Assembly (NCBI GenBank): GCA_904063045.1
Contig: CAJFCJ010000001.1
Coordinates: 2,170,001 to 2,234,000, forward strand
DNA from: Dimorphilus gyrociliatus
Taxonomy: Eukaryota; Animalia; Annelida
DNA: 64,000 nucleotides
Direction: 5' to 3'
Shown: piece by piece, positions 9,911 to 31,400 of the stretch
How positions within the stretch are numbered: the first letter of the stretch is position 1
Layout of the letters: the number at the start of each line of letters is the position of its first letter
Program-made: the position numbers and the translations under genes
Notes under the pieces: generated by a model
The model's database searches: none
What the model was told of the DNA's origin: nothing
What the model saw: only the letters and a program-made list of their open reading frames with translations

Positions 9911-12900
9911 TCCTATCCTCTTCTCTTTCCCTTTATTTTCTATATCAACTCGTAAAAAATAACCAATAATAAAATAGAACAATAAAAGTAACGGGGATTA
10001 AGAAAAAGTAAGAACTAAACCTATTTATTACGTCAAGCTTATGAAGAAATGCTATATATTTTATACAATTACTTCCGATTGCTCCGTAAGCCTTTCTATA
10101 TTTAACTTATTTCTAATCTTTCATGATATAAAATATGTTAATATTCTGGGTGATATAGACTGGGAGAAGGGGGAAAAATTTACTATTTGCTAGGCCTATA
10201 CTTTTAATTAGCGAAGAGGATATCTAATGATTAGGATATGGCGTGAAAAGTCAAAAATATTAAATATTTATTTAAGCTAATTAAAGGAAACTCTGAAAAA
10301 GTGTTTGAAATAGGTCTTGTTTCTCGATTAAAGTAACAGTGGATATACTATATATTTCTTTTTTATTTATATTGCGCCATCTATAGAGAGTTCGATTTAC
10401 TTTATTTTCTTTTTTTTGTATAAATATCGAGTCTCCTTTTCAATTAGAGAGAATAAACGCATAGTTTAAGATTTTCAAGGACTAATAATTTAGTAATATA
10501 CTTGTAAACTTAATGTTTTGTTCAAATCTAGTAACGGATTTGCAATGTGACACCGAATATAGAATTTATAAGAATGAAGATGCTTGTTATAGACCTCCGC
10601 ATTGTCAATGTTGGTCTGTTGATTTATTAAACATATCTTTATAACTTTTAATACGTTACTTTCAAATTTAAATGAAATAGAAAAGAGTTTATTAATGTTT
10701 TCCTTTTAAGTACTCAACCTCCTAAATTGGTTTCCGGAGCTGAAATTTGCTCAAGACATTTACCGGAAGGCGAATCATATGCCGAGTGGGAGGGGAAGGT
10801 GGCCGATGGAGAGCCGGAACAAAGATGCAGGATTACAATTGTCGTTGAAAAGAGGGAATTTGATAAAAGAGACGACGAATCCGAGTCTAGGGGGAGAAGG
10901 GATGAATCAACTTCTACCAGTTCGTTTCATTTCTTAAATAATGCTTATCTTTTTCTTTTTACCATTTGTTCCTTTATTCCTTCCTACTGGACAATTATAG
11001 AGCATAATTAGACTCTATTTTTTAATTAATTAACAGATAGAACGGCTTCGAAAGAAGAAACGATACTTTGCAGAACGCCGAATGGGTTTAATGCGACATT
11101 CAACGTTATATTGAATCACTTGAGAGCATCTGGCAAGACGCCGAACGAATACGTGATATCGGAGTCGATTTTTGGAGGGGAATTTAAGTGCCAATCGACC
11201 ATTGTATTGGGAGCTACATGCAGCTTTAAATGTCATAATTCCTACCGCCTACCTCCAATGAGGAGGAAACAACTAACCTTACGTTGTGAGATTGCCTTGG
11301 GCAAGCCTACTCTTGTTCTTGAGGGCCCCGTTAGTAATTTGTTGGAGAAATCGTACAGGGAATGCTCGCGTGAGTTGTTTATTTTATTAAGGACGGTTTC
11401 CGAGCACACGACCGAATGTTTTTCTTTTAGACGGTGTTTTTTCCTCCCAAAACCTAGTTTCTTTCTCATCAAATTTCCATCATTTTCATTATACTTTCAA
11501 CTTTCTCTTCATTCTAGCTATTTTCGTCTATATCATGCCTTTTTAAAGATTTTAGTCTTTCTCTGTTAGCTTCACCCAGAACGTGCCAGACGATTAAAGG
11601 AATCGAAAAAGGGAAAATGTTTGGAAAAGGAGGTAATAATGGAAAATTTGGAGAAACCATATCCATACGATGTGATCCTGGTTATATAATACCCGGATTT
11701 AAGAATCTTAGCCAAGCGACCTTAATCTGCTCGGATTATGAATTTAAGAAGAGTTTTAGCGATAAAAAAATTACAAGCAATACTCTACAATGGAGAATTG
11801 TTGAAAAGGGAAATGTCCCATTCGACGAAATGCCTAATAGGATTTTTAGGTGTGCAGGTAAGTGATAAGAGAATAGGCGTATAAGGCAGACGACAAGGTT
11901 AATTAATGTAAATTGATGGTTTGCTGTAAAACAAGTAAACCATCCGTTGAAGAGTCTATTGAATTACAGTCTGCACCATTGATCAACCGCTATTGCAGTT
12001 GCTTTCTAAAAATACTATTCTAAAATTGTTCAAATGAAAAAGGAAAGAAAGGGGAAATAATTATTTTGTCCAGAAGGTGTATATAGGTCAAGGGAACATG
12101 AAATGAATCTTATTTTTCGATTAGCAAACTTTTCTTCTATCTTTTATTCTAATTCGTTACTTTTTTTCTCGTTTAATCGATGAAAATCAATCTGACCATA
12201 AGACAAAAATTCCGACAGTTATTTACGGTGTTTTACTGCCCGCTTGTGTATAATTTGCATTTTTTGCCAATTTCATTAGTTAACGTCCCTCGATTTTGTT
12301 TCTCTTGCTATTCTGTTTATTTATTACTAATATTTTCATAATTATAAATTTATAATAAAATAATGGAATGGTAATAGTGTATGCTGATTGCATAAAAGAT
12401 GTATGCATAGATTTTTACTGCAGGCCAATTTTCACCGTTTGTGGAAAATTGTAAGGGACACGAACCGGATTTGGACGAAAAGCCGCCCGGGGAACTTGAA
12501 GAGCGTTTCCATTTCGTTAGAGCGTCGAAGAGTAAATTCCCTATCGAAATCGATATGAAAAGAGCCGGTTGGTATCCTCGTTTCCTTTCCGATGGTAAGG
12601 AAGTTATAAGTAATCTACAAAAGAAGAATTTCAAAACACTAATAATCAAAGAACCAAATGAGATTTATAGACTTAATTTTTCTGCCTCAAATCCTAGATA
12701 TCCTCACTATTCAGCCCATTGTTTAATTGCAGTGATGGGTTTCAGTAAGTTTATACTCATATACTGTATCCTATATATACATATATACAGTATATATAAT
12801 TTTCTTTCACTATATCAATATACGAGATTCTAGAAAAAACAATATATCTATATATATATATATATATTTATATATTCCCTAAATAGGTCAGTGTTCTAAA

Positions 12901-15354
12901 AGAGAAATATATGAGTCTTACCTAAAATTTCTAAAAAGCAAGACCTGGAAATTTTATTGTGAATCTGCATTAATTAATAAGGATAGTAGACCTATTTCAA
13001 GACCAAATAGAACTTGTACCTTTCAATGTAGGAATCATAGACAAGTCGCTCACGAATTTCGGTCAATCGGTAAGAATTTAATTTGTGAGAATTACGAGAA
13101 TTGGTATGGTTTGGACGAAACAACTTTTATGTGCGTTGGTTAGTCTTCTAATTATAATGAGCGTTTTTTATTAACTTAATTTAATGAAATGATCGTTTTT
13201 TTCACTCCCTCTCTTCTACTATTTTATACTTACTCTCTATCCATCTATCTAAAGATAAATATCAGCCATCATACGTTGTTATCAAGTACAAAATATTAAT
13301 TGAGACGATAAAAGATTGTCCAAAGCTGGACGAGGAGAGAGAACTAAAGAAAACGTTTAATAAATTGTTTCTATACTTAGTCGATGGTAGCTTTCTATCA
13401 TTTGATAATCAATTAAACTCCTATGAATGTAGTAATATTAGAAGATTATGGAGGATGGATATTCTGTTGTTTAAAAGAAATAGAAATGATTTTAGTAGCA
13501 GTCACACAGTAAGCCCTGTTTATCTGAAATTGAGGGACGAACTGCAATCGATATATGACTCTAAGGCTGATGAATTTTATTATGATTTATTTCGTATAAA
13601 CGATAATGGTACCCGTCGATTAAGACGTAGATTGTTATACACTAGAAGTGGATGCAGTCATCCGGGTCTGGCAGAGAACTATGAAAGTCATTATTGCAGT
13701 TAGTATTTTGATTGTTTAGTATTAATTAAGAATAGATTAACTAATTAATTAATCAAGTCTAGAACTAATATAAACGTGTCGAAATAGAGAGGTTAGGATA
13801 GTATGAGAAATATTTGAATATCACAAACCGGTCTGTCATTTCCTTCGATTATCCTCTTACTACGGGAAATATTACGCCACTCTCTTTAACGTTTTTTCTG
13901 AAGGATATCGATAATTTATTTGCAGTTGGATGCCTCAGGGGTTATATGATGTCGAAAGATGGCGATGAATGTATACCCTGCCCGAAGCATCATTATCAAG
14001 ATGAAATTGAGCAGTCGGATTGTAAACCTTGCCCAAAGGGGCAACATCAGCCGAACCAAGGTTCTTCATTCTGCGAGAATTGTCCCGGAAATAATTGCTC
14101 GAATCCTAAGGCAAAAAGGAAATCGGAAAACGATGGAATAGGTATAAAAAGCGTCCGGAGTAACGTCACTTTGTCGTTTAATACCCTCAGCTGTCCAGAT
14201 GTCAAACCGAAGAGGAGGATGAAATTTTACAATTTCCTCAGTAATTTGTTTAAAAACTATCACACAATAGTCGTAAAAGTTACAACAATTTGCAGTATTA
14301 TTGAGGTATTTCCTAAATTTCCATATTATTTAATGCTATAAGCGATATAAGGCGATTCTATACGGTAATATCTCAATAAATAACATCAATAAAAGACTTG
14401 GGCTAAAACAGGATTACAGAGATTTTCGATTGTAGCAACTGTACAATACGAACCGAGTAGACTTACAGGTTTAAAACAGTCAAAAGATTCATCAACGTCC
14501 TATTTAAAGAAAGCAATCAACACCTTTAAATCTATTATTAAACAACGAGGCATTAAATTTATAACAACTAAACTATTGACCGATGCCGACAAGGCTAACG
14601 TTCTGTCTTATCATATGAGGATTTCTGCTAATAACAAGTTTGTGGTCGACTGCCCTAAAGGAATGAATTTATTACAAGACGGATTTTGTCGTAAGTTGTT
14701 TATATATATATATATATATATATACTGTATATATCGTAAGCAAAAGCCAAAAAAAAACAAATATTTCAACAAGTAATATTCATAAGAAAGAGGTGAAATT
14801 CACGTGAATATAAACTCGAAAGATAAATGGTTAAAAATATTAAGTTTCTACTTTCCTACAACTTTCTCTATCATTTATTAAATAATAAGTTAATTCAATG
14901 GAAAAGTAAGGACTGTTTCGATGCTTTCGTTTTTTTATCTTTATCTATAAATATCGAGTTAAAAAGTGTTGGGGGAAAAGATAGGGGGAAGGGACTATGA
15001 TGAGGGAAGAGAAGAGTTAAAGGGGGAATAGTAGAGGAATAGTGTCTCTATAAGAGATTGTAATAGGTAAAGGAGGACACCAGCTGAGTAAGTACTTAAG
15101 GATATTTTGAAGTATTCTTATTAGGTTTTCTTTTTTTTTAATACGTTTCTTTTCTTTTAGTATATTTCTTATATTTAGTTATTTATTATCGTTTTTCACC
15201 TTTAACAGACGTCAATAACCGCAATAACTCAAGAAGTTCGCTCCGGTGAGAAAGTATTGAAGAAATATCATAATATACTGATAATATACATATATATCTA
15301 TATCTGTATACGTATACTTGTTTATTATTTTGTATTACTTTCAGGTTTCATTAA
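9541..15354 (+). CDS. Multi-exon type II membrane protein with HYR-like, sushi/CCP-like and ephrin-receptor-like (GCC2/GCC3) Cys-rich modules
   Basis: Exon 1 (9541-9634) MMEYKHKGILIKLLSFILPIIGIGGVIGLIL is an N-terminal TM anchor. Later exons: about 10531-10605, 10711-10919, 11039-11379 (CSFKCHNSY), 11570-11858 (IRCDPGY), 12424-12745, 12888-13138 (CTFQCRN), 13255-13699, 13927-14111 (CIPCPKHHYQDEIEQSDCKPCPKGQHQPNQGSSFCENC), about 14180-14690, 15209-15246 and 15345-15354. Several junctions are phase-consistent; others are approximate. Confidence 0.75.
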
Positions 15355-17745
15355 TTATGAAGGTTAATTTTGTCTATATTGATTATTTTTTTAAGTCATC
15401 AATTTTTTTACTTAGTTTCTTCGATTTTTACTATATTTGGAACATTATTTCAATAAAGTTCTTAGTTTATTCATTGCTGAATATATAAATATATCACTTT
15501 CTAAATATAAATATATTTATATGCATTATTAACTTCTGGCTGATGGTAAGTAAGGCTTTTTTTTGTTTCGCTTTTCTTTACTTCTAGATTGCTAGCGTCA
15601 TCTGGTTTCTTTAATATACAAACGTACGTAAAGATGAAAGTTTTGTGAAAAACTTACATGATATACTTTTATAAAAAGCGAATCAATTTTTAGAATAGTC
15701 TCCCCACCCCCCGTCTCAATACGCCAATTTCAAGATTTTACATCGAATATTGACGGGTTTAGAATATCTTCCAAGAATCCTGAATAGTTTCACCTTCATA
15801 CTTTAGCACACTTATCCTTTAACTCTGAGCATACTTCTCTTTCGCGGTCACATTAACTTACCTGCAGATCTCTCTTTCCCTACCTAGAATTGTCTCTGTT
15901 CTCCTTGCCTTCTCCACTTTTTGCCTTCTTAGGTTAAGTGATGAATATGTGACTTCTGTAGAAATTTCTTAACTTTCGCTTGATATTTGTCCAAACAATT
16001 TCCTTTAAGCTTCCACTCTTTTGGATTTTAGATTTGCTTCTCCATAAGCGTCCATTTAGTCTTAATTTTATTGATATTTTTGCCTTTGAAAGTCACATAT
16101 TGAATAACTCGTTGGACCTCTGGTTTGGTACAGCTTAACAGAGAAGATAGTAACCATATGAAAGACACTACAAGTAACTAATGATGGATTAACGTTACAT
16201 AACATTTGTGGGAAATGACTGAGAAAGACTTTAATATATTCCCTTTTATTTACTATTGTTTTATATAGGAAGATAAATGCAATCTCCTGAAAGTTATTGA
16301 TCCTTACTCGTATACTTTAGCTCTTCTGTCCTCTATAAACAACGTGTCATGCATCGATATTCATTCAATAATGAATCATGTGTATTCTATTTGTAAATAT
16401 CAATTTATATTTTCAATGAAGTAAATAAAATCATTAATAACTTAAGACTAAATTTAACGACATTAATATTAGATCTGTAATTTTATTAAGGTCATTAGGT
16501 GACAAACATTAGGGATAAGAATTGTGTAATTTTGGTAATTTTCAAAATGAATACTTAATTAATTAAATTTCAGTAGAGGTCAGAAACCTTTGTTGGTTTA
16601 ATTACCATATAAATATATAATAGTTTTGAATAGAACATATGGTACCGAAATCATATTTTTATGTTTTAATACATTTGACTACATGAATGAAATCTGTATT
16701 TTGTCGATATGTCTACTGGATAATTACTGAGAACTACTTTATAATACTACAACAACAAATGAAAGTGATTTAGTTGTAATAGTAGGAAATAGTTAAAATG
16801 TACATTTAATCATACTAGAGATATTTAATGCTAGTAGTAAAGATATTACCCTTAATGGACATTCATTGAGAAAGTTAAAGTAGAAATTGAATAAGAGTCG
16901 ATCAAAGAGTCTATAGTTTTTGCAATATTAGAACATTAAGTGGGTTTAAAAGTAGCCGTTTTCTCTTCAGACATTGTACAAGTATATTGATACATAAAAC
17001 CTCAGAATTCACTGATGACTTACATAAGTGACTATACCAACTATTATACCCTAATGCATTATATAACAAGCTCTCTATCCACATTAAAATAGCAATACTT
17101 TCATATTTTTTTATTGACTTTTTACAAAGTGTTACAGGTAGCTTAATAATTTAGTATATCATATCTAAGATTCTCTTATATTTTCATTAAAAAGAATAAT
17201 ACCATGAATAATAGCGTACATGATACATCAGATTACATCTTCTAATAATTTATGATCCACAAGATTTTAGTCACATTTTTAACATGATATTCATTATCCT
17301 TTGCAATCTTTCTTCATTTCTATATACACTATCTATTCAGTGGAAGTGATTTCCCTTTGCTTTTTCGATAAATATGCTAAAATGTTAGAGGATACTCTTT
17401 GCCAAATATTTTTATATTAAATACTTAATGTGAACTAATGCGAATATGTTATCTGTTCAAATTAATATTCCTTCTTTCTCTTTAAAGGAAAGAGTGTATA
17501 TTTGATCTTGTTCATTAAGATTTTATATTTCTGGGAAGTTGTCATAAAAGCTAAATGTTTCTTGTTGAGTGTGCGGAATAAATTAAATAATTGCTGGAAT
17601 ACTGTCTTGTAAACAAAATTGAAATTGGTAATACGATAGAATAAGGAACACAAACAGAGAGACATGACAGAAAAGTGATGGACTATAGACGGCGTGCTTA
17701 TAAAAATAAGAGACTCCAGCAGTTTTCTTCATTTGAGATTTAGAA

Positions 17746-20700
17746 ATGTATCGGCAATTGCTGCTCATCATTCTTTATGTACCATTTAGTTGTGAAGCAA
17801 TTAGAAATGTGAAACTAAGTGGAGCAGGAGCAAGTTTTCCAGAAAAGGTTTACTTGACTTGGCAAGCTGCTTTTAGAGCTAAGAGAAGTGAATATGTCAA
17901 TTTAAAAATGGAATACGAAGCGGAAGGTATACTAATATCTATATATATATCTGTATATACTGTATTTATACTATACCTGACTACTTATTTTAGTGCTGAT
18001 TACCTTATAACACTTTATATATTAGATACATATATATATATATATATATATATAGATAGATTGATAGATAGACATTCTTCGTTTTGTCAAGATATAAAAT
18101 GATGAAAATACTAGACTACATAAGATTGCAGTTTGTTTATAAATATTAAAATATCAACATTTTACCATCTAAAGAACAAAAACTAAACAAATGAAAGCTT
18201 ATTATTATAAATGTATAGATAGGATAGATTTTTTCTATATTGTGAATTGTTGTTTCTTGTTGAAGCATTACTTAATACATTTCTTTAGTGATTAAAGGGA
18301 ATATAGGAAAAGTGTACTTTTTTTAATATTATAATTCCTTTAAAATCCCACTCTATTTATCTTTTTAAAGTTTCTCGTCTGTTTATATTTTTAAAAATTT
18401 TATTTCCAACAAACAGGTAGCGGGCATGGTAAAAAAAGAATTATGGGATTATTAGATCCACCTGTTCAATATGCTGGTTCAGATGCAGTATTAACTAAAG
18501 AGGAAAGTCAAAGTTTTCCTGATCTTAAAATGTTTCCTACTATGGCTGGGTAAACTTTAATGTCTCTTTTATTAATATTTTTTATTATAAATGTATTTTT
18601 AAATTCAACTACAAATGCTTTTTTTATCTATTGTAGTCCAATCGTTCTTATATTTAACTTGCCAAATTGGAATCCTAAAGTATCATTAACCTTATCAAGA
18701 GAAGAAATTGTCGGCATATTTAATGGAACAATAAAAAAATGGAATGACCCTCTAATAATCAAACATAACAAAATTTCTTTGCCATTTCGAGATATAAAAG
18801 TTGTTGTCAGAGAAGATAAGTCTGGCACTACGGAAATATTAACCAATGCACTATCATCTTTCGATAGCAACTGGAAAGAAACATATGGAACTTTTAGCAC
18901 TAAAACTGCTTGGAAACAGAGTACCATATATAAATATGCGAAAAGAGTATCTGGTATTAGTGATTTAGTTAAAGCAACCAACTACTCTATAGGTTACTAC
19001 ATTAAATATATAGTATATAATATTTAAGGATAAAATGTTTTCTTAACTTTTTCTCTCTTTTTAGGCTATACATCTTTAAATAGCGCCTTAGCCAATGGAT
19101 TACCCTATGCTTCTATCATAAATAAGGCAAATAAAATTAGTTACCCTACAGCCGAAGCTGTTCAATCTAGCATGGACGCAAGCTCAAATTTTACTGAGCA
19201 GCTTACTTCTAAAATTGTAGACGCTTCGGGTAGTGACTCTTATCCAATAAGTGCCTATACTTATATAATTGTTTATATGACACAGTTAAGAGATTGCAAT
19301 CAGGTATATCATTTTTTGTTCAATATAATAATTTATCAATAAACTAATCGTTTGATTTTTAAAGGCTATTGAACTTGCTCGCTATTTTAATTGGTTTTTT
19401 ACTGAAGAACAAGCTGACAGTGAATGCTTAAATTTTGATATGGTACCGTTAAGCAGAAAAATAAAAACAATTATCAAGGATAGAATTATAAAGAAGATGG
19501 AATGCAATGGTAAAAACTTATGGACACTTGTACAAAGCCAAATAAAAGATGAAGAAATTGTAAACGATGACTGGAAATTGGTTATTGGAATAACAATACC
19601 AATATTTTTAACGACTGTTGCTGTATTTCTATTTTATTTTGGCTATAATAGAATTAAATTAAGAAAATTATTGAACAAGGATGACTGGAATATCAATTTT
19701 GAAGATATCATATTTTACGTTCCAGATGAAAATCAAAGAGTTATTACTGGAAAATTATTAAAATCTGATAGTCTTAGTCTGAATTCTGAAACTGTTGACC
19801 TGTCACACAATTCAGGTGCAGATATATCCGTTTCATACATTTATCTAGTCATTTATAGTAGACGCTTATCTTTACCTTATACTAATATTTTACAGTATAT
19901 ACATAATTCATAGGTATCAGTAAGAATCTAGTAGTAAAGCCAATTACGTATAATTTTGTTTTGGAGAAGCCATTAAAAGGAGCTCTTCTAATTTATTTAG
20001 GTTTACTGTATTGGCCTGGAAAATGGCAAGGAAATGATGTAGCTATAAGGTTAAATTCATTACCGCCAATTACTAAATTTGACAAAGATATGAAAAAATC
20101 TTTAATATGGAAGAAAGATAAAGTTATTAATGATAACATTCTAAGATTTTTTGGTTTAACAATGATGGAGGATAAATGGTATCCAATTAATGAAATTGGT
20201 TCGAAAGGAGCTTTGTATGATATATTACAGGATAAAAAATATAAAATAAACGAACCCCTTAAGTTCTCTCTTGCAATTGATTTGGCTAAAGGTATGGCTT
20301 TTTTACATAGTAAATTATTCATTCATGGCGCACTACGATCTTCGTGCTGTATAATTGATTCAAAATGGACCGTTAAAGTGGCTGATTGGGAATATAATAG
20401 CTTTTACAATCATCACTTAAGAATATTATCAAAAAATACTAAAAACAGCCAAACTTTCCCGTTAAGTCATTATATTTCTACACGAAAAGAGCAATTGTTC
20501 GAAGGAGATTACGCTAAAGCTTTGTTCGATTTTAGCACCTCCCCTGAAGTATTAAAAAATCAATCGTTTAAGCTGGATTGGAGATGTGACGTTTATAGTT
20601 ATAGTATGATAGTACAAGAAATTTGGTCAAGAGATGATCCTTTCGCCGAAATTACTCAAACTATAGATGTACAAGACGTACTTTTAGGAATAAAAAATAA

Positions 20701-21804
20701 TTGTTTAAGGCCGAAATTTCATGAAAGTACACCACCGGATGTAAGTCTTCCTTTTTCCTAGCTAGTCATTATTTTTTAATTCTAATTTGTTATATATGAG
20801 GTTTGTCAAATGATGGAAATTGCTTGGTCCGATGAACCAGAACGTCGTCCAACTTTTGATCATATTATAAAAATGCTTAAAAAAGCTAATCCTTCAAAGA
20901 AGAATATTTTAGATGCTGTTATCGAAACTATGGAAACATATACAATGGAACTTGAAGAGAAGTGTACAACAATTAGTAAAGAATTAACAACCGCTAATGA
21001 TAATCTAACCACTCTCGTTGGTACATTTATAAATAGAAATATTCTAGAGCAATTAATTGCTAGTAATATTAAAACCCTACAAAATGATTCTAATTATTTA
21101 ACATTAGGAACTATATCCATATGTAATTCAAAAGATTATTTACTCAAGTCAGATGTTTCTTGTATTATCGAAATTCTCGATGAAATTGATAGATTAACCG
21201 ATAAGCATTTTAGAAAGATGAATGACTGTTCAAGATTGTTATTGACAACTGGAGAATATGGAATTGTTTCTGGAATTACTTGTTCCCAGGTGATACTGCA
21301 AATAAGTTTGTCAAATATACTGATTTCCAGACACATTTTTAGGTCATTAAACAAATAATAACTAGCAATTATTGATTTTTCTTTTCAGATTGTAAAACAG
21401 TGTTGTATAGTTGCTTCAATTCTCTTAGATATTATTAAAGATTTTGAAGTGTTTGCCAAATCCAACAAGATAAACGTAGATTTAATAGGCAAAGTACATA
21501 CGGCAAGAGGTCGGGGTTTAATTATTGGCCATGGAATACCTAGATTGGAAATAATTGGTCCAGTTTGTGACGAAATATTAACGATACCAAATTTTTCTTT
21601 AAAAAATAAAATAATAGTGACGGAAACTGTCCAACTAACATTAAAATCAACTGGAAAATACGCATTCGAATATCAAAAAGACTTCCAGGTATACACACGA
21701 AGAAAATGCTACTTTTTTACTGATCTTAATAACATTTTCTCCTCTTTCCTTTTTAGAACGAAAATCATAATAAACTATATATTTTGAATAAAAGTCCAAT
21801 CTAG
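17746..21804 (+). CDS. Receptor guanylyl-cyclase-like protein: signal peptide + PstS-type phosphate-binding ectodomain + TM + pseudokinase + degenerate cyclase
   Basis: Exons 17746-17926, 18417-18549, 18637-18992, 19065-19303, 19365-about 19815, 20001-20740, 20801-21289, 21389-21688 and 21757-21804. PstS motifs: GAGASFP, GSGHGK, AGSD, VREDKSGTT, IGY, SYPISAYTY. TM: WKLVIGITIPIFLTTVAVFLFYFGY. Kinase-homology motif HGALRSSCCIIDSKWTVKVADW. rGC dimerisation helix NILDAVIETMETYTMELEE. Cyclase remnants GEYGIVSG and GHGIPRLEIIG. Confidence 0.9.
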
Positions 21805-22226
21805 AAATTCACTGGAGTAATATAAAACAAAAATTACAAATATGACTTTTCATACCATTTCTAGTATATTTAAAATGTTTTTGTTAAAAAGAGTCTTATT
21901 TCAATAGGCTCTTTGTTTACTATTTATGGTTTTCCTGTAAAGACTAATTCAGTGATGAATAAATTTGACATAATTAATTTGTTATATATTCATATATCAA
22001 TATCTTTCTTCTTTTTTTTTCCCCTAATTCTTCTTCCGTCTTATAATACTAATTCATTCTTAAGAAAAGATGATAAAAGTAAAGATTTGGCTTACAACCA
22101 GATAAATTGAATATTTCAGCTTTGTTTCGTGATTTTTTATCATTCTATCCGAATGTTATTGTTATTATCTTTATATACAATTAATTAATTCTTTATTTAA
22201 GTAAGATGTATATTGAAAAATGACAA

Positions 22227-22777
22227 TCACAATAAATTCGGTTCAACTGAGCAATTTTTCTCTTGTATTTCCCTAATTTTGTTATTATAAAGCGGTAAAC
22301 AAAGAGATAACGATCCATCTTTAGGTTTTAATCTATCGGTAACATTCTTAAAACATAAAGAGCAGTTTTCTCCACTTAAATGCTTACATTCTTCCATATT
22401 TTGGGCAAACGTTTCGCTTTTAAGAAAGATTTTACAAGTATCATAAAAGGAGCAAATGGTTGATAGAGTATACTTTGTTTGCTTATCAATATCACAGCTA
22501 ACCTTCAAAAAAGAAAATAAGACAAAATATGTCAATTACTACATTTTCTACTGTAAAATTCAAGAGAATGAATAAGTACTGTAATAATATCAATGCTAAC
22601 ATAAACTCTGGCGTCTAAAAAGCAATTTTCGCAAGCCGTTGACGGTTCTTTTGCTAAGCATTCAATTTTTTTTCTGTCCCATATTCTAAGACATTTTTTC
22701 GAAATTTCAATGTTTCGACCTCTTGTTATGTGTTTTGAGTTTATCAATATAATAGCTAAAATAGCTTTTAATATCAT
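22227..22777 (-). CDS. Small secreted cysteine-rich protein (about 150 aa, 12 Cys), probably two exons
   Basis: Signal-like MILKAILAIILINS. Two adjacent Cys-rich ORFs (22532-22777, 22227-22535) can be joined in phase 0 via donor TAT|gttagc (about 22601) and acceptor ttttgaag|GTT (about 22502). The splice model is inferred. Confidence 0.6.
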
Positions 22778-23183: not shown

Positions 23184-23612
23184 TTATACACCTTGAAACG
23201 GCAAGCAGCTCTTTGAGCTGACTGATCCACGAGATGATAATGGCTTTAAACCTGTATATACATTGTCAATTCTCAAAAGTGATCGTACGTCAAGTTTCTT
23301 TTCGCAACTTTTATGTCTGCTGATCGATTGTCTACTTCTCGATTGAGACATAATTCCTGAGCTTCTACTCCCTAGCATCTTATCCATTCTATTTCTCATA
23401 ATCATTTTGCTCCTACCATATTTACTCGAAGTAAAGTAATTTAAAATTGTAGGATCATTCGATAATAATTTAAAATGTTTCTTAATAATATATATGAAAA
23501 TAACAGCGATTAAAATGCCAATCAATGTTAAAAAGACAACTATAGCCGTTAAAATAATTATATGAATAAATGAAATAGCTTTAAATTCATTATCTTCCTC
23601 TCTCATTTTCAT
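23184..23612 (-). CDS. Orphan single-pass membrane protein (142 aa)
   Basis: ATG-initiated ORF with a roughly 28-residue hydrophobic stretch (ISFIHIIILTAIVVFLTLIGILIAVIFIYII) followed by KKH and a basic, Ser/Arg-rich tail. No recognisable domain. Confidence 0.55.
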   Translation of the reverse strand: MKMREEDNEFKAISFIHIIILTAIVVFLTLIGILIAVIFIYIIKKHFKLLSNDPTILNYFTSSKYGRSKMIMRNRMDKMLGSRSSGIMSQSRSRQSISRHKSCEKKLDVRSLLRIDNVYTGLKPLSSRGSVSSKSCLPFQGV

Positions 23613-24653: not shown

Positions 24654-25976
24654 ATGAATAATATACTTGTTCATTATCCTGACTTGAAAATTCCTACTCT
24701 AGGAGCTGGAGGAAGTTTTACGGATAGACTATGTAATAGTTATACTACTTCTATATTATTCTTCTTTGCTCTTTTAGTAACAACTCATCAATATGTTGGG
24801 AATCCTGTGATTTGTTGGTGTCCGTCTCATTTTCAACCAAGTCAAGTTTCTTATACAAATAACATATGTTGGACTAAGCGAACGTTCTACGTACCGTACC
24901 ACTTTCCAATACCAAAGGCAAATGATAAGATAGAAAGAATAGGCTATTATCAATTCGTTGTTTTAATTCTTTGCGCTCAAATGATTATCTTTTATATACC
25001 TAAACCTCTTTGGTCATTTTTAAGTCAAAAATCTGGAATTTCAGTATCAATATTTACAAATGCGGCACTGGAACACGAAAAACAAAACGAAATTGACAAG
25101 TCCGAAAATATAAAAAACTTCATAAAGAGTCACTTATATCATTTCCTAAAAGACGTTTGTAGAAAGAGGTTGGCTGCCGAGAAAAAAAGAAAAAAGTCCA
25201 AGAAACGTAAATGGTGCTTATGTTATGACTTTTATGGCGATTATTTAGTCTTTTCATACGTCTTTATCAAGTTTATCTACGTCGTTATATCCGTTTCTCA
25301 GTTATTTCTACTTAATCTATTTTTGGGAATGAATTATCACATGTATGGATTACAAATGATAATCGATCTACAAAATGGAAGAGATTGGACCGTATCTGGT
25401 CGTTTCCCAACAGAAACTATATGCGACCTTACAATAAGAGTTCTCGGTCAGAGACATCGCTACACCGTACAATGTTCATTGCCTATAAACCTCTTTAATA
25501 GGATGATATTTTTTGTATTGTGGCTGTGGTTTTGCTTCGTATCTGTAGCTACAACTATCAGTTTATTAATGTGGATTAAACGTCAAATAATCAGCCCTAA
25601 TTATACATTTATAAAGGAGAGCTTAACGACATCTTACCGATTTGACGAAGAAAATTTAAAGAAAGAAAATATCAAGAATTTCACTCTGAAATTTCTTAAA
25701 AGGGATGGAATGTTCCTTATCAAATTAATTGGATCAAATTCAAGTCAATTGATTGCGGCCGAAATTGTTGCAGATCTATTTAAAAGATTCAATAAAGATA
25801 AAGCAAATCTTTTCAATTTTAATGAACAAGAAGATAAACTATTATCATTAGATTCAAATTTTCAATCCTTACAAAATATTGATTCAAATCCTACGTATAA
25901 AATGAGTAACGGATATGTAGAATTTCCTCCAATATCAAGACCAAATTATAAAGACTTTTATCGTTCAACCTTATGA
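24654..25976 (+). CDS. Innexin (gap-junction protein), intronless CDS
   Basis: 440 aa with DRLCNSYTT, QYVGNPVICWCP, NNICW, YYQFV, RFPTETICD and CSLPINLFN motifs, four TM segments and paired extracellular cysteines typical of innexins. Confidence 0.96.
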   Translation: MNNILVHYPDLKIPTLGAGGSFTDRLCNSYTTSILFFFALLVTTHQYVGNPVICWCPSHFQPSQVSYTNNICWTKRTFYVPYHFPIPKANDKIERIGYYQFVVLILCAQMIIFYIPKPLWSFLSQKSGISVSIFTNAALEHEKQNEIDKSENIKNFIKSHLYHFLKDVCRKRLAAEKKRKKSKKRKWCLCYDFYGDYLVFSYVFIKFIYVVISVSQLFLLNLFLGMNYHMYGLQMIIDLQNGRDWTVSGRFPTETICDLTIRVLGQRHRYTVQCSLPINLFNRMIFFVLWLWFCFVSVATTISLLMWIKRQIISPNYTFIKESLTTSYRFDEENLKKENIKNFTLKFLKRDGMFLIKLIGSNSSQLIAAEIVADLFKRFNKDKANLFNFNEQEDKLLSLDSNFQSLQNIDSNPTYKMSNGYVEFPPISRPNYKDFYRSTL

Positions 25977-26068: not shown

Positions 26069-27460
26069 CAGTCCGCGACAGAAGTTTTCATATAAAAATT
26101 AAATTTTTTTTGATAAAAGAGCTCTTTTTTTTATTTCTATTAGGAATTTTTCAGGTTTTTTTGTAAATATTTGTTGAAGAATATGTTTGAAATGAAACTT
26201 TGGATTTGGTTTGCTGAAAAAAATATGTTTTTAAATTTAATGTTTATTTATCTTTAAAATTAAGAGGAAAAAAATGCGCCATAAATTTTAATATAAGCTT
26301 AATTAATTAGTTTGACATCGTTTTTTTTGCTAAATTTCTATTTTTTGTCAAGGTATTTAAGTTATTTTCCAATCCTGTTACCTTTGTTGGCAACAACTTG
26401 CCAAACTCTTTCTCCCATTCTTTTGTATAAATGTTTAACATATTGTCTATTATCTCTATTTATTTTTTCCACCTCTAATAGAATTTTGTCCCACAAATCA
26501 TTGAGTGATTGACATCTGTCAATTTCATAAACGTTTTGTTTCAAATAGCCCTATAAATTTTCAATGGGGTTTAGATCTGGTGAATATGGAGGCCAAGGAA
26601 GGACTTGTATTCTGTTCTCCTCCAGTGTATCTCTTGTTACACTGGCAGTGTGTGGGGGTGCATTGTCCTGCTGCCAGATGAAGTCTTCACCAAATTTTCC
26701 CTTAACATTGGAAAAACTGTCCCCTGAATAAATTCAGAGTAAATTTCTCCATTGATGTTAGAGGGAAGTCTTTGGATGAAAACTTCACCATCTGAGGATA
26801 TACACCCCCACACCATCACTCCTCCTCCACCAACAGGGAGCTTATCCCTATACAGTCTTGGACGATCATCCAATTGCCAGGTTAGCATATGGTCTGGGCC
26901 ATCCAGAGAAAATCTGGACTCATCAGTAAATATGACTTTGTTAAAATTGATTTGTTCTTGAACCCATCTACCTACAACTTCGAAGCTAGTTCTTTTTTAG
27001 CCCTTGCTGTTAAAGGGCAAATTTTGGGGATAGGCATGTAGCTTGCTCCATTCTCTTTCAGGATCCTTTGAATGGTCCTTTTTGAGATTTCCAGCCCTAA
27101 ATTTCTCTTTATTTTGCTTGAGGTTGCAAGCTCTTTTTTTTCTTGTAGTCTTCCGCATTCTCTTTTTATAAGATTTTTCACTCTTTCACTTACCTTTGAA
27201 GGTCTACCCATTCTTTTAGGTTGTTCTTCCCTTCTCTCCCTGAGAGATGACCTAGGGATATTCAGGTCAACTGAAAGCCTGTCATAGGTCATCTCTGTTT
27301 TTTTTCATCTTGCCAGCTCTCTAATTTGTGGATGATACTTCATCTTAAAAAATAATTTTAAGGATTTGTCTTCTAAAACGTAATTGTTCGAAATTCGAAT
27401 GTTTTATAAGTTTTTTAGACAAAAAACATCCTTATACAGATACTTATGGCGCATTTTAAA
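26069..27460 (-). mobile_element. Decayed Tc1-family (DD34E) DNA transposon
   Basis: Left end is TA|CAGTCC at 26069 within a (TA)n tract. A 14-bp internal inverted repeat lies at 26271-26284 and 27444-27457. The matching right terminal repeat was not found, so the right boundary is approximate. Confidence 0.8.
26362..27343 (-). pseudogene. Tc1 transposase pseudogene
   Basis: HTH region MGRPSKVSER...ISKRTIQRILKE. Catalytic motifs VIFTDESRF, GVMVWGCIS, WQQDNAPPH and WPPYSPDLNPIEN, with 34 residues between the second D and the E. Interrupted by TGA (codon 13), TAG (after NPIENL) and two frameshifts (about 26972 and about 26695). Confidence 0.92.
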
Positions 27461-28457: not shown

Positions 28458-31400
28458 ATGAAGTCATACCAAGGTAATCTATATATAAATTATATTTAGT
28501 TGATTATTTGATAACTTCTTAACTACCATGCTAATAACAGTGAATGGTAATGATGGAAAAAGAGAGACAAATTCTAAACCAGATAATATAGAAGAAGAAA
28601 CAACCGAGAAAAAAGAGGCGAAAATGAAGGAAGAGAAGGAAGAAAAACAAAAACAAGCAAGTCTAAGATCATTGGTAAGTATATTTATTTTCAAATAATT
28701 AACTTAAAAAAACCAGTTTTCTAAGAGTTTAATTAACTGTTACTTTTAATTATAGTACCGATATGGGAAGGCAGTTGATTATTTATTTGTTGGTATAGCA
28801 CTTATCTGCAGTATTGGAAGTGGTGTATTGCAACCAGTAATGTTTCTACTCTTTGGAGAGATGACAAATTCGTTCGTAGAAAATGCTGGTCAAAATACAA
28901 CCGAAGAGACGAAACTAGCGCAGGATAGACTAACAGATGATATGAACAAGTTTACAATTTATTTCTGTGGATTTGGCGCTGGAAGTTTCATTTTAAATTA
29001 TATACGATATCTCTTCCTATTAAATATATCATATAAAATCAGTAGTCGAATGAGAAGTGCATTGTTTACAAGTCTTCTTCATAAGGAAATAGAATGGTTT
29101 GATAAGAATGAAATTGGTACGCTAAATTCAAGATTAGTAGGGTAAGTTTTGTTTTTTTCAGTTTCTTTATTTACAAAATTCCTACAAGCGTACAAGTTTT
29201 CATCAATCGATATTCGCCATATATGGGCAATAATGATTTATAAGAGAGTAGAACACTAGGTCGAATGCAAAATTCGGCCGCCAGGATCGCATGTCTCAAG
29301 AACGCTATACGCCTAGTGACTAGAACTGTAGGTCACATCTGACAAAAGTAGGATATATAATACGTAGGGGAGGGGAAATAAAGCTCAAAACTGTTAAACC
29401 ATTCAATAATCTTATAATGCAAATTTGCATAAGTATCTGTAATTTATCATTGATAATAAAAGCAATAGAAGATATAAAATACAATGATTGCTTTATCTTA
29501 AACAACTTTCTTGAAATTTTAGTGATATTAATAAAGTTGAAGAAGGGATTGGAGACAAAGTCGGAACAATATTTGCTGGACTATCAGGCTTTATTGGAGG
29601 ATTCGTTATTGCTTTTGTAAAAGGATGGAAATTAACATTAGTTATTCTGGCTACAACCCCGATTATAGCAATACTGGGAGCAGCAGTATCAAAGGTAATC
29701 ATACATAATTTACCCAATTTGAAAGAAGATAGTAAAATCGTTAATCTTTAAAAAGTTGTCAGCGATTCTGGCACAAAAAGAATTACAAGTCTACAGCAAA
29801 GCGGGTGCAGTTGCGGAACAAGCTATTAGTAATATAAGGACCATTTCCGCTTTCTCTGGACAGCAAAAAGAAGCGGCTCGATATGATCAACAATTAGGAA
29901 AGGCAAAAAAATTTGGAATAAAAAAAGGGCTTGCCACTGGAATATTTATGGGCTCATTCAACCTAGCCTTTTTTGGAATGATGGCTTTAGCTTTGTGGTA
30001 CGGTGGAAAACTATACAGAGACGAAGGCTTAAAAGTCGGAGATACTGTTACTGTTTTCTTTTCGGTCCTTTTAGGAGCCTTCTTTTTGGGATTATTGGTA
30101 ACAAAAGATATTTTTTTCTTTAAAAAAAATTGTTCAAATCAATTTTATATATTCAGGGTCCAGCACTTGAAGCTTTAGCATCCGCTCGTGCTGCTGCATA
30201 CGCCCTATATCAAATAATAGACTCCAAATCAACCATAGATAGCAATTCTAAAAACGGAAAGAAGTCAAAGATTCAAGGAAATATTGAATTTCGTAATGTC
30301 AAATTTAGATATCCTACTCGTCAAGAAATACCAGTTTTAAATGGTGTCAGCTTTCAAGTTTCAACTGGAGACACCATGGCACTAGTTGGCAGTAGCGGAT
30401 GTGGAAAATCAACTTCTGTTCAACTTTTACAACGATTTTATGATCCAGAAGAAGGAGAAATACTTCTTGATGGCGTCAATATCAAAGATATCAATGTTGG
30501 TTGGTTGAGAGACCATATTGGAGTTGTTTCCCAAGAACCGATACTCTTCGATAATACAATTAAAGAAAATATTCGCCTTGGAAGAGAAGGAGTAACCGAC
30601 GACGACATAGAAAAAGCTGCGAGAAACGCAAATGCTTACAACTTTATTACGAAATTACCTTATGGTTTTAATACGAATGTTGGTGAGAGAGGAGCTCAAC
30701 TCTCTGGAGGACAAAAACAAAGAATAGCAATCGCCAGAGCACTCGTTCGAAATCCTGTTATCCTCCTACTAGACGAAGCAACTTCCGCTTTAGACACTGA
30801 AAGCGAATCAATTGTTCAGGATGCTCTGAATAAAGCTTCGGCAGGTAGAACAACCATTGTTATTGCTCATAGATTATCGACTATAAGGAATGCAAATACT
30901 ATATGTGCATTTGATAAGGGACACATTGTTGAAAAAGGTAATCATGATGAACTGATGAAAATCGAAGGAGGAATCTACAACAAATTGGTTACAGCTCAAC
31001 AATTCAAGGATGAAGAAGAAAAGACAGACGATGATTTCAGATCTGATGATATTGACATAGAATATCAATTCAAGAGACAAAAAAGTAATGGTAGTAATAA
31101 TAGTAGGAGAGGAAAACACGGACTAACATCCATGACAAGTATAAAAGATGATGAAGTATTGGATGACGAAGAAGGAGATGTGGCACCTACTCCTTTCTTT
31201 CAAATATTAAAGTTAAATGCTCCTGAATGGTGTTGGATATTGGTAGGCGTTTTTGGAGCTCTTATCACTGGAGGGGTGAATCCTGTCTTTGCAGTATTAT
31301 TTGGAGACGTAATTAAAGCTTTTACGAAAGAGGACTCAGAGCAAAAGAAAGAAATAGCTCTATATTGTGGGCTATTCGCAGGAATTGGAGTACTTGCTGC

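What the first reader, a model, noticed from the sequence alone, without database searches (positions are those of the whole stretch)
17746..19640. Animal membrane receptor whose ectodomain is a PstS-type phosphate-binding protein with an intact ligand site: candidate extracellular phosphate sensor
Seen in sequence: after splicing, the ectodomain carries residues matching the phosphate-contacting positions known from bacterial PstS. These are GAGA-S-F-P (Thr10/Phe11 equivalent), G-S-GHG (Ser38), AGS-D (Asp56) and V-R-E-D-K-S-G-T-T (Arg135, Asp137, Ser139, Gly140, Thr141). It sits between a signal peptide and one TM helix, where receptor guanylyl cyclases normally have an ANF-receptor-type domain. 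Four GT-AG introns interrupt this region, so it is an integrated animal gene and not bacterial contamination. Established: PstS is the high-affinity periplasmic phosphate binder of ABC uptake systems, and animal extracellular phosphate sensing is poorly understood. Inference: this is a phosphate (or phospho-ligand) receptor built by domain fusion, possibly from an ancient horizontal acquisition.
Basis: partly seen in the sequence, partly recalled or inferred. Interest (0 to 1): 0.87.

Follow-up and report, generated by a model that had tools for sequence, protein, structure and literature searches.

The report
Phosphate-clamp receptor with dead cyclase
This worm gene makes a cell-surface protein whose outer part copies the bacterial clamp that grips phosphate, but its inner enzyme part is dead, so it probably binds outside phosphate without making the usual signal molecule (cGMP) itself.

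Summary
Window 17746-21804 (+) is a nine-exon GT-AG gene. One public transcript contig joins all nine exons with no mismatch.

The 978-aa product has:
- a signal peptide;
- a full PstS-type phosphate-binding domain;
- one TM helix;
- a receptor-guanylyl-cyclase-type kinase-homology domain;
- a signalling helix;
- a cyclase-homology domain.

All phosphate-contacting positions of E. coli PstS are kept (Thr10 is Ser). The same signature, SFSDRDSGT, is nearly invariant in relatives from molluscs, annelids and nemerteans; priapulids also have the family.

The cyclase-homology domain keeps none of seven catalytic residues. It is still conserved against a syntenic ortholog (dN/dS about 0.14).

My reading is a real, expressed, phosphate-binding but non-catalytic member of a protostome-wide PstS-ectodomain rGC family. 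It probably acts as a regulatory or scaffold subunit. Phosphate binding and signalling are untested.

PstS sensor modules also sit on cyclases, kinases and class C GPCR cores in protists, fungi and a green alga. A recent bacterial transfer into this animal is therefore not supported.

I found no paper describing the family. The scan has already flagged two paralogs on other pieces of this genome (s1-080272, s1-080197).

The parts
17746..17926 (+). Exon 1: start codon, signal peptide (aa 1-17, 17746-17796) and the first PstS strand-loop with GAGASFP (S30/F31 = E. coli T10/F11)
18417..18549 (+). Exon 2: PstS segment with GSGHG (S62 = S38) and AGSD (D83 = D56)
18637..18992 (+). Exon 3: PstS core with VREDKSGTT (R163, D165, S167, G168, T169 = R135, D137, S139, G140, T141)
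   Evidence: Pfam PBP_like_2 at E 3e-12; PDB PstS alignments; splice joints
19065..19303 (+). Exon 4: second-lobe PstS segment, ending at the conserved Cys301
19365..19815 (+). Exon 5: last PstS helices with conserved Cys324 and Cys350, stalk, single TM helix (aa 374-397, about 19575-19646) and juxtamembrane segment
20001..20740 (+). Exon 6 as used in the mRNA: kinase-homology domain of the rGC type (VAIR, HGALRSSCC and DWE replace VAIK, HRD and DFG)
   Evidence: Pfam PK_Tyr_Ser-Thr at 70.8 bits; acceptor at 20001 seen in the transcript
20801..21289 (+). Exon 7: end of the kinase-homology domain (to about 20905), signalling helix (about 20906-21100) and first half of the cyclase-homology domain without the metal-binding Asp residues
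21389..21688 (+). Exon 8: second half of the cyclase-homology domain without the Cys, Asn and Arg catalytic or specificity residues
21757..21804 (+). Exon 9: C-terminal 15 codons and the stop codon
19914..20000 (+). In-frame, stop-free 87 nt upstream of exon 6, behind a possible alternative acceptor; the only transcript seen does not use it

Best explanation
The gene encodes a type I membrane protein of a protostome-wide family. In that family the usual ANF-type ectodomain of receptor guanylyl cyclases is replaced by a PstS-type phosphate clamp.

**Shown**
- The gene is intact, spliced and expressed.
- The clamp carries every phosphate-contacting residue.
- The intracellular part is an rGC-type kinase-homology domain, a signalling helix and a cyclase-homology domain.
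- The cyclase-homology domain has none of the seven catalytic or specificity residues.
- All domains are conserved against a syntenic ortholog.

**Inferred**
- The two-lobed clamp closes on extracellular orthophosphate.
- That change is passed through the single TM helix and the dimeric intracellular module.
- This paralog cannot make cGMP. It most likely acts as a non-catalytic phosphate-binding subunit.
- It may pair with catalytically intact PstS-cyclase paralogs and damp or tune them. A dimer with a fully dead partner has no complete active site.
- Alternatively it may work as a scaffold with an output other than cGMP.
For: **Gene reality**
- Nine exons, all GT-AG.
- One transcript contig joins them with no mismatch.
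- A syntenic ortholog locus, L001, is collinear with window 9962-22777.
- dN/dS against that ortholog is 0.12 for PstS, 0.11 for the kinase-homology domain and 0.14 for the cyclase-like domain.

**PstS identity**
- Pfam PBP_like_2.
- PDB sequence hits are all phosphate-binding proteins, nearly all named PstS.
- An AF2 model of the Owenia homolog's ectodomain has pLDDT 96. Its best PDB matches are phosphate-bound E. coli PstS, TM 0.79/0.86.

**Ligand site**
- All positions are kept here and, apart from Thr141 (Ser), in the ortholog.
- The signature SFSDRDSGT is nearly invariant in 24 animal relatives.
- The positions are also well kept across all 92 aligned PstS-type segments.

**Dead cyclase**
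- The signature reads SLGIEDT against DEDRCNR in the family alignment; a separate pairwise comparison also found none of the seven kept.
- No Pfam Guanylate_cyc hit on the exon pieces.
- The region is still homologous to cyclase domains: 35 bits against an HMM built from 18 clear ones.

**Precedents**
- rGC ectodomains act as direct sensors of small ions, and obligate rGC heterodimers exist (PMC5225109).
- NIT-domain GCs carry a bacterial-type anion-sensor domain in animals (10.1101/2023.08.02.551600).
Against: - No binding or signalling data exist for any member of the family.
- I could not fold this protein itself, because a spliced product has no reference. The fold evidence comes from a homolog that is 42-49% identical over the PstS exons 1-4 (31% over the short exon-5 piece).
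- dS is saturated (1.6-2.0), so the dN/dS values are approximate.
- The heterodimer idea rests on catalytic paralogs reported only in unchecked scan notes.
- An AU test does not fix which subfamily the gene belongs to (p 0.257).
- The VAIK lysine of the kinase-homology domain is Arg, so even ATP-dependent regulation typical of rGCs is uncertain.
Confidence: 0.6

Rival explanations
1. It is a working phosphate-gated guanylyl cyclase: phosphate binding outside switches on cGMP synthesis by this same protein.
For: It has the overall rGC layout of kinase-homology domain, signalling helix and cyclase-homology domain. Some relatives, such as the Owenia and Priapulus proteins, keep the full catalytic signature DEDRCNR and strong Pfam Guanylate_cyc scores of 221-222 bits.
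Against: None of the seven catalytic or specificity residues is kept here. At the aligned motifs the syntenic ortholog's cyclase-like region is degenerate as well. Neither exon piece gives a Pfam Guanylate_cyc hit at E up to 1.
Confidence: 0.03
2. The clamp binds something other than free orthophosphate, such as arsenate, sulfate, pyrophosphate, a phosphorylated molecule or a phosphoprotein. Or it has become a ligand-independent structural domain.
For: Binding specificity was not measured. The animal domains carry extra features absent from E. coli PstS: three conserved Cys, N-glycosylation sequons and a C-terminal stalk.
Against: Every hydrogen-bonding residue of the E. coli site is kept. This includes Asp56, which accepts a proton from phosphate and, by established knowledge of PstS, excludes sulfate. 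These positions are nearly invariant across phyla. That pattern is hard to explain without the same small ligand.
Confidence: 0.2
3. It is a cell-surface phosphate-capture or tethering protein, for example feeding a transporter or controlling mineral deposition. It is not a signalling receptor, and the dead intracellular part serves only as an anchor or dimeriser.
For: The catalytic output is lost. PstS proteins in bacteria deliver phosphate to a permease.
Against: The kinase-homology and cyclase-like domains are as constrained as the clamp, with dN/dS of 0.11 and 0.14 against 0.12. A mere anchor would not be expected to show that. No transporter gene is adjacent: the neighbours are an Ephrin_rec_like-domain gene and an innexin.
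Confidence: 0.1
4. It is a decaying duplicate, an expressed pseudogene of an active PstS-cyclase paralog.
For: It is the most degenerate cyclase-like domain among the 63 relatives scored.
Against: The 978-codon frame is intact and the mRNA is correctly spliced at word depth 66. The syntenic ortholog also has an intact frame. Non-synonymous change is far below synonymous change in every domain.
Confidence: 0.05
5. It is bacterial contamination or a recent bacterial gene transfer mis-joined to an animal gene.
For: The domain type is best known from bacteria.
Against: - Four spliceosomal introns lie inside the PstS part, and one transcript joins it to the TM and kinase exons.
- The GC content of 28% matches the flanks.
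- The ortholog shows the same layout at the intron positions seen: between exons 1-2, 2-3, 3-4 and after exon 5.
- The animal ectodomains form one clade, apart from the prokaryotic PstS clade.
Confidence: 0.01

Closest known systems
Bacterial PstS (E. coli phosphate-binding protein, PDB 1IXH/2ABH)
   Same: It has the same fold at family level (TM 0.79/0.86) and the same Pfam family. All phosphate-contacting residues are the same, with Thr10 as Ser.
   Different: It is not a free periplasmic partner of the PstCAB importer. It is anchored by a TM helix to a kinase-homology and cyclase-homology module. It is intron-containing and probably glycosylated, and it carries three conserved Cys and a stalk.
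Receptor guanylyl cyclases (GC-A/NPR1, retinal GCs, C. elegans GCYs)
   Same: It shares the signal peptide, the single TM helix, the rGC-type pseudokinase (HGxLxSSxC) and the signalling helix (LD..E.ME.Y...LEE), followed by a class III cyclase-homology domain. Some GCY ectodomains sense inorganic ions directly (PMC5225109).
   Different: The ectodomain is a type II binding protein (PstS) and not ANF_receptor. None of the seven catalytic residues is kept, so it is a pseudo-cyclase. The VAIK lysine is Arg.
NIT-domain guanylyl cyclases of invertebrates (Platynereis NIT-GC1)
   Same: It is an animal cyclase-family receptor whose sensor is a domain type known from bacterial small-anion sensing. It is spread over many invertebrate phyla.
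   Different: The sensor domain is different (NIT against PstS) and so is the presumed ligand (NO, nitrite or nitrate against phosphate). NIT-GC1 is catalytically active and has been tested. This protein is inactive and untested.
PstS-ectodomain rGC relatives in public protein sets (Haliotis, Argopecten, Owenia, Tubulanus, Helobdella, Priapulus), auto-named 'ANP receptor-like' or 'retinal GC-like'
   Same: The same architecture, PBP_like_2 + PK_Tyr_Ser-Thr + Guanylate_cyc. Identity is 28-37% over nearly the full length, and the ligand signature is the same.
   Different: A minority keep an intact catalytic signature (Owenia, Priapulus and five unnamed). Most are partly degenerate. This gene and its ortholog are the most degenerate.
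DING proteins / human phosphate-binding protein
   Same: They are PstS-superfamily phosphate binders reported from eukaryotic samples.
   Different: The relationship is far more distant. The Haliotis homolog's ectodomain hits DING entries at about 2e-4, against 3e-35 for PstS. DING proteins are soluble and have no established eukaryotic genes (PMC2225411 abstract).

Membership tests
PstS / Pfam PBP_like_2 phosphate-binding proteins | Profile match above the curated threshold | tested here: met
   Exon 3 alone scores 47.3 bits against a cutoff of 27, E 3e-12. Full-length relatives score 60-115 bits.
PstS / Pfam PBP_like_2 phosphate-binding proteins | Closest solved structures are PstS, and the fold is the two-lobed type II binding protein | tested here: met
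   All 19 PDB sequence hits of exon 3 are phosphate-binding proteins, nearly all named PstS. The fold was tested on the Owenia homolog only: pLDDT 96, and the top 20 Foldseek hits are PstS or PhoX.
PstS / Pfam PBP_like_2 phosphate-binding proteins | Phosphate-contacting residues Thr10, Phe11, Ser38, Asp56, Arg135 (with Asp137), Ser139, Gly140 and Thr141 | tested here: met
   They correspond to S30, F31, S62, D83, R163, D165, S167, G168 and T169. The residue list is from PMC6549937.
PstS / Pfam PBP_like_2 phosphate-binding proteins | Binds orthophosphate with high affinity | not testable with these tools
   This needs a purified ectodomain.
PstS / Pfam PBP_like_2 phosphate-binding proteins | Free solute-binding partner of a PstCAB ABC importer | tested here: not met
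   The domain is joined in one mRNA to the TM, kinase-homology and cyclase-homology exons. The neighbouring genes are not pstCAB.
Receptor guanylyl cyclases | Type I topology: signal peptide, ectodomain and a single TM helix | tested here: met
   One hydropathy peak at aa 373-397 and a hydrophobic N-terminus.
Receptor guanylyl cyclases | Kinase-homology domain followed by a signalling helix | tested here: met
   PK_Tyr_Ser-Thr at 70.8 bits. The region aligns with family members through the helix.
Receptor guanylyl cyclases | Class III cyclase catalytic domain recognisable by profile | tested here: inconclusive
   No Pfam Guanylate_cyc hit at E up to 1 on exon 7 or exon 8 taken alone. The region scores 35.4 bits against an HMM of 18 clear cyclase domains from relatives.
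Receptor guanylyl cyclases | Catalytic residues: two metal-binding Asp, Glu/Arg/Cys for guanine, and Asn and Arg for the transition state | tested here: not met
   None of seven is kept: SLGIEDT against DEDRCNR.
Receptor guanylyl cyclases | ANF_receptor (type I binding protein) ectodomain | tested here: not met
   No ANF_receptor hit on any ectodomain exon.
NIT-domain guanylyl cyclases | NIT domain as the sensor | tested here: not met
   No NIT hit in the Pfam scans. This family is an analogue only.

The most novel reading that the evidence does not exclude
Protostomes may have a two-part extracellular phosphate receptor system. It would be built from PstS-ectodomain cyclase-family proteins: catalytically intact subunits that make cGMP, and conserved pseudo-cyclase subunits like this one that bind phosphate and set the gain or sign of the response by pairing with them. 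This would be the first direct, dedicated extracellular phosphate receptor known in animals. It would also be part of a eukaryote-wide use of PstS clamps as receptor ectodomains, on cyclases, kinases and class C GPCR cores.
Probability: 0.25. Interest if true: 0.85.

Novelty: new variant of a known kind. Interest (0 to 1): 0.68.

Why it matters
How animals detect phosphate outside their cells is an open question. [quoted passage not shown]

This gene offers a membrane receptor family whose ligand can be predicted from sequence with unusual confidence, because the binding site of the best-studied phosphate clamp is kept residue for residue across phyla. That makes the question directly testable with a binding assay and a cGMP reporter assay.

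This particular gene adds a twist. The clamp is conserved on a subunit that cannot make cGMP. That points to regulation by non-catalytic partners or to an unknown output.

The wider search also shows that PstS clamps serve as receptor ectodomains in protists, fungi and a green alga. I found no paper describing this in the searched library.

Tried and rejected
1. **First exon-6 model.** My first model started exon 6 at 19914. The transcript uses 20001, so the product is 978 aa and not 1007.

2. **Looking for this gene's own protein in the databases.** I needed an id for it so that I could fold it. I tried a representative search with exon 3 and a profile search seeded with the window's exons. 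Neither returned it. The structure was therefore predicted for the Owenia homolog and not for this protein.

3. **Pfam Guanylate_cyc on the exon pieces.** No hit. I replaced this test with a family HMM.

4. **Placement in an old pseudo-cyclase subfamily.** The quick ML tree puts the gene among the degenerate-cyclase members. An AU test does not reject placing it with the other group (p 0.257), so I do not claim it.

5. **Horizontal transfer.** The domain tree separates the animal, other-eukaryote and prokaryote groups but is unrooted and weakly resolved at depth. No donor can be named.

6. **Literature.** Ten searches found no paper on PstS-cyclase or PstS-receptor fusions in eukaryotes.

7. 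**Species identity.** This is not established. The innexin next door is nearest to nematode clusters in the Atlas. The receptor tree puts the gene near a leech sequence.

8. **Tool availability and operators' note.** The look-up of sequencing runs was busy twice before it answered.
Full report
**Gene structure**

The region lies in AT-rich DNA of about 28% GC, the same as its flanks. From the ATG at 17746 I built a nine-exon model in which every intron is GT-AG.

One 2953-nt contig in public run X1 lies on the window with no mismatch. It lacks all eight introns:
- The joints for introns 2 to 8 are listed explicitly.
- Intron 1 is shown by contiguous contig positions 182/183. Its joint row was dropped because of a simple repeat inside the intron.

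The contig confirms every junction of my model except one. Exon 6 starts at 20001 and not at the upstream in-frame acceptor 19914, so the product is 978 aa. The PstS exons are therefore spliced to the TM, kinase-like and cyclase-like exons in a single mRNA.

**What the ectodomain is**

- Exon 3 alone matches Pfam PBP_like_2 at E 3e-12, 47.3 bits against a cutoff of 27. No ectodomain exon matches ANF_receptor.
- Against the sequences of all solved structures, every hit of exon 3 is a phosphate-binding protein, nearly all named PstS: Yersinia 2z22 at 1e-13 and E. coli 1ixh at 4e-10.
- The printed alignment places our R163, D165, S167, G168 and T169 on E. coli R135, D137, S139, G140 and T141.
- The Haliotis homolog aligns with E. 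coli PstS over residues 3-281 and with our exons. Through it, S30/F31 correspond to T10/F11, S62 to S38 and D83 to D56.
- These are the residues that hold phosphate in E. coli PstS (PMC6549937).
- The only change is Thr10 to Ser, and Ser is the commonest residue at that position among relatives.

I could not fold this spliced protein itself. I folded the ectodomain of the Owenia homolog, which is 42-49% identical to our PstS exons 1-4 (31% to the short exon-5 piece), using a 51-row alignment. The model has pLDDT 96 and pTM 0.92. Its best structural matches are phosphate-bound E. coli PstS entries at TM 0.79/0.86. Further PstS and PhoX structures follow, and DING proteins come well behind.

**The rest of the protein**

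- There is one hydrophobic peak at aa 373-397 and a signal-like N-terminus.
- The ectodomain has three N-glycosylation sequons and three Cys (301, 324, 350). The Cys align with conserved Cys of the family.
- Exon 6 matches PK_Tyr_Ser-Thr at 70.8 bits. It has the rGC-type pseudokinase motifs HGALRSSCC and DWE, and VAIR in place of VAIK.
- A signalling helix aligned with the family follows.
- Then comes a cyclase-homology region. It gives no Pfam Guanylate_cyc hit on the exon pieces. It scores 35.4 bits against an HMM I built from 18 clear cyclase domains of relatives.
- At the seven catalytic or specificity positions, the canonical relatives read DEDRCNR. This protein reads SLGIEDT, so none is kept.

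**Is the gene functional?**

A 13.4-kb genomic contig from a related species (L001) is collinear with window 9962-22777, including the upstream and downstream neighbours. It carries the whole gene with open frames.

| Region | dN/dS against the ortholog |
|---|---|
| Whole protein | 0.13 |
| PstS domain | 0.12 |
| Kinase-homology domain | 0.11 |
| Cyclase-like domain | 0.14 |

Amino-acid identity is 64% overall. dS is saturated at 1.6-2.0, so the ratios are rough, but non-synonymous change is clearly held down in every domain. The ortholog keeps the ligand residues, with T141 as Ser, and its cyclase-like region is degenerate at the same motifs. The gene is not a decaying copy.

**The family**

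A search of 1.84 billion representative proteins with exon 3 gave 2168 hits. Many align with our protein over almost its full length at 28-37% identity.

Named members come from:
- gastropods, bivalves and a chiton;
- nemerteans;
- annelids (Owenia, Paralvinella, Helobdella);
- Priapulus.

Automatic annotation calls them ANP-receptor-like, retinal-GC-like and similar. Their Pfam architecture is PBP_like_2 + PK_Tyr_Ser-Thr + Guanylate_cyc.

The nine-position ligand signature SFSDRDSGT is identical or nearly so in 23 of the 24 animal relatives with a complete ectodomain.

Only seven relatives keep the full catalytic signature: Owenia, Priapulus and five unnamed. About forty are degenerate to varying degrees, and ours is the most degenerate.

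A quick ML tree splits the receptors into two groups. One contains all the intact-signature members. The other contains only degenerate ones, and our gene sits there near a leech sequence. An AU test does not reject moving our gene to the other group (p 0.257), so I leave its subfamily open.

**Origin**

In a tree of 94 PstS-type domains, the animal receptor ectodomains form one clade (SH-aLRT 95). The prokaryotic PstS sequences fall in another (98). Other eukaryotic sequences lie in between.

Those other eukaryotic proteins are receptor-like fusions too:

| Organism | Architecture |
|---|---|
| Fabomonas | two PstS domains + kinase + cyclase |
| Ostreococcus | PstS + cyclase |
| Endogone, Calcarisporiella, Amoeba proteus | PstS + class C 7TM core |
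| Rigifila | PstS + ANF_receptor |
| Chromosphaera | four PstS domains + Ephrin_rec_like, with a weak sub-threshold TRP match |

The PstS clamp is thus a widely used eukaryotic sensor module. Nothing points to a recent bacterial transfer into this animal. A very old transfer cannot be tested with this unrooted, weakly resolved tree.

**Mechanism**

The evidence supports a surface protein that binds orthophosphate in a closing two-lobed clamp and is wired to an rGC-type dimeric intracellular module.

Both halves of the cyclase active site are gone. The protein cannot make cGMP, and a dimer with an intact partner would also lack a complete site.

I therefore favour a non-catalytic, phosphate-binding regulatory or scaffold subunit. 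Alternatives are a different ligand, a capture or tether role, and, very unlikely, an active cyclase or a pseudogene.

Precedents are direct ion sensing by GCY ectodomains and obligate rGC heterodimers in C. elegans (PMC5225109), and NIT-domain GCs in invertebrates.

**Novelty**

Ten full-text searches found no description of PstS-ectodomain receptors in animals or other eukaryotes. The proteins are in public databases under generic automatic names.

The scan has already flagged two paralogs on other pieces of this genome (s1-080272, s1-080197). I did not examine those sequences.

I rate the finding as a new variant of a known kind: a cyclase-family receptor with a different, ligand-predictable ectodomain. 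The added point is that this copy is a conserved pseudo-cyclase.

Noticed in passing
window 24654-25976 (+): A single-exon 440-aa innexin ORF lies downstream. The ESM Atlas holds it letter for letter, and its nearest clusters are nematode innexins.
   Followed up: partly
window 12441-14320 (+); L001 2673-4905: The upstream neighbour has exons encoding an Ephrin_rec_like domain. It is conserved at 53-84% aa identity and collinear in the related species. The same domain type accompanies four PstS domains in a Chromosphaera protein. This is probably coincidence.
   Followed up: no
window 19304-19364 versus L001 about 10100: Our intron 4 (61 nt) is absent from the ortholog. The ortholog's intron 3 is in frame and stop-free, so an ORF caller read straight through it to produce the 386-aa protein P0004.
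   Followed up: partly
window 17928-18079: Intron 1 holds TA and GATA microsatellite runs. The read-laying tool skipped this stretch as a repeat.
   Followed up: no
window 26637-27292 (-): ORFs resembling a Tc1/mariner-type transposase with a helix-turn-helix part appear broken into pieces. This reading rests on motif appearance only.
   Followed up: no
window 28828-30178 (+) and onward: Exons here look like the transmembrane domain of an ABC transporter of the P-glycoprotein type. No profile search was run.
   Followed up: no
window 23184-23612 (-); L001 13122-13298 (-): Minus-strand ORFs lie between the receptor gene and the innexin. One is a 142-aa ORF with a hydrophobic segment. Separately, a short L001 ORF matches window 22583-22777 at 35% identity.
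   Followed up: no
proteins P0072, P0086, P0128 (not in the window): Fungal (Endogone, Calcarisporiella) and Amoeba proteus proteins combine a PstS-type domain with a class C GPCR 7TM core, although the Amoeba 7tm_3 match is below Pfam's threshold. This suggests phosphate-clamp GPCRs outside animals.
   Followed up: partly
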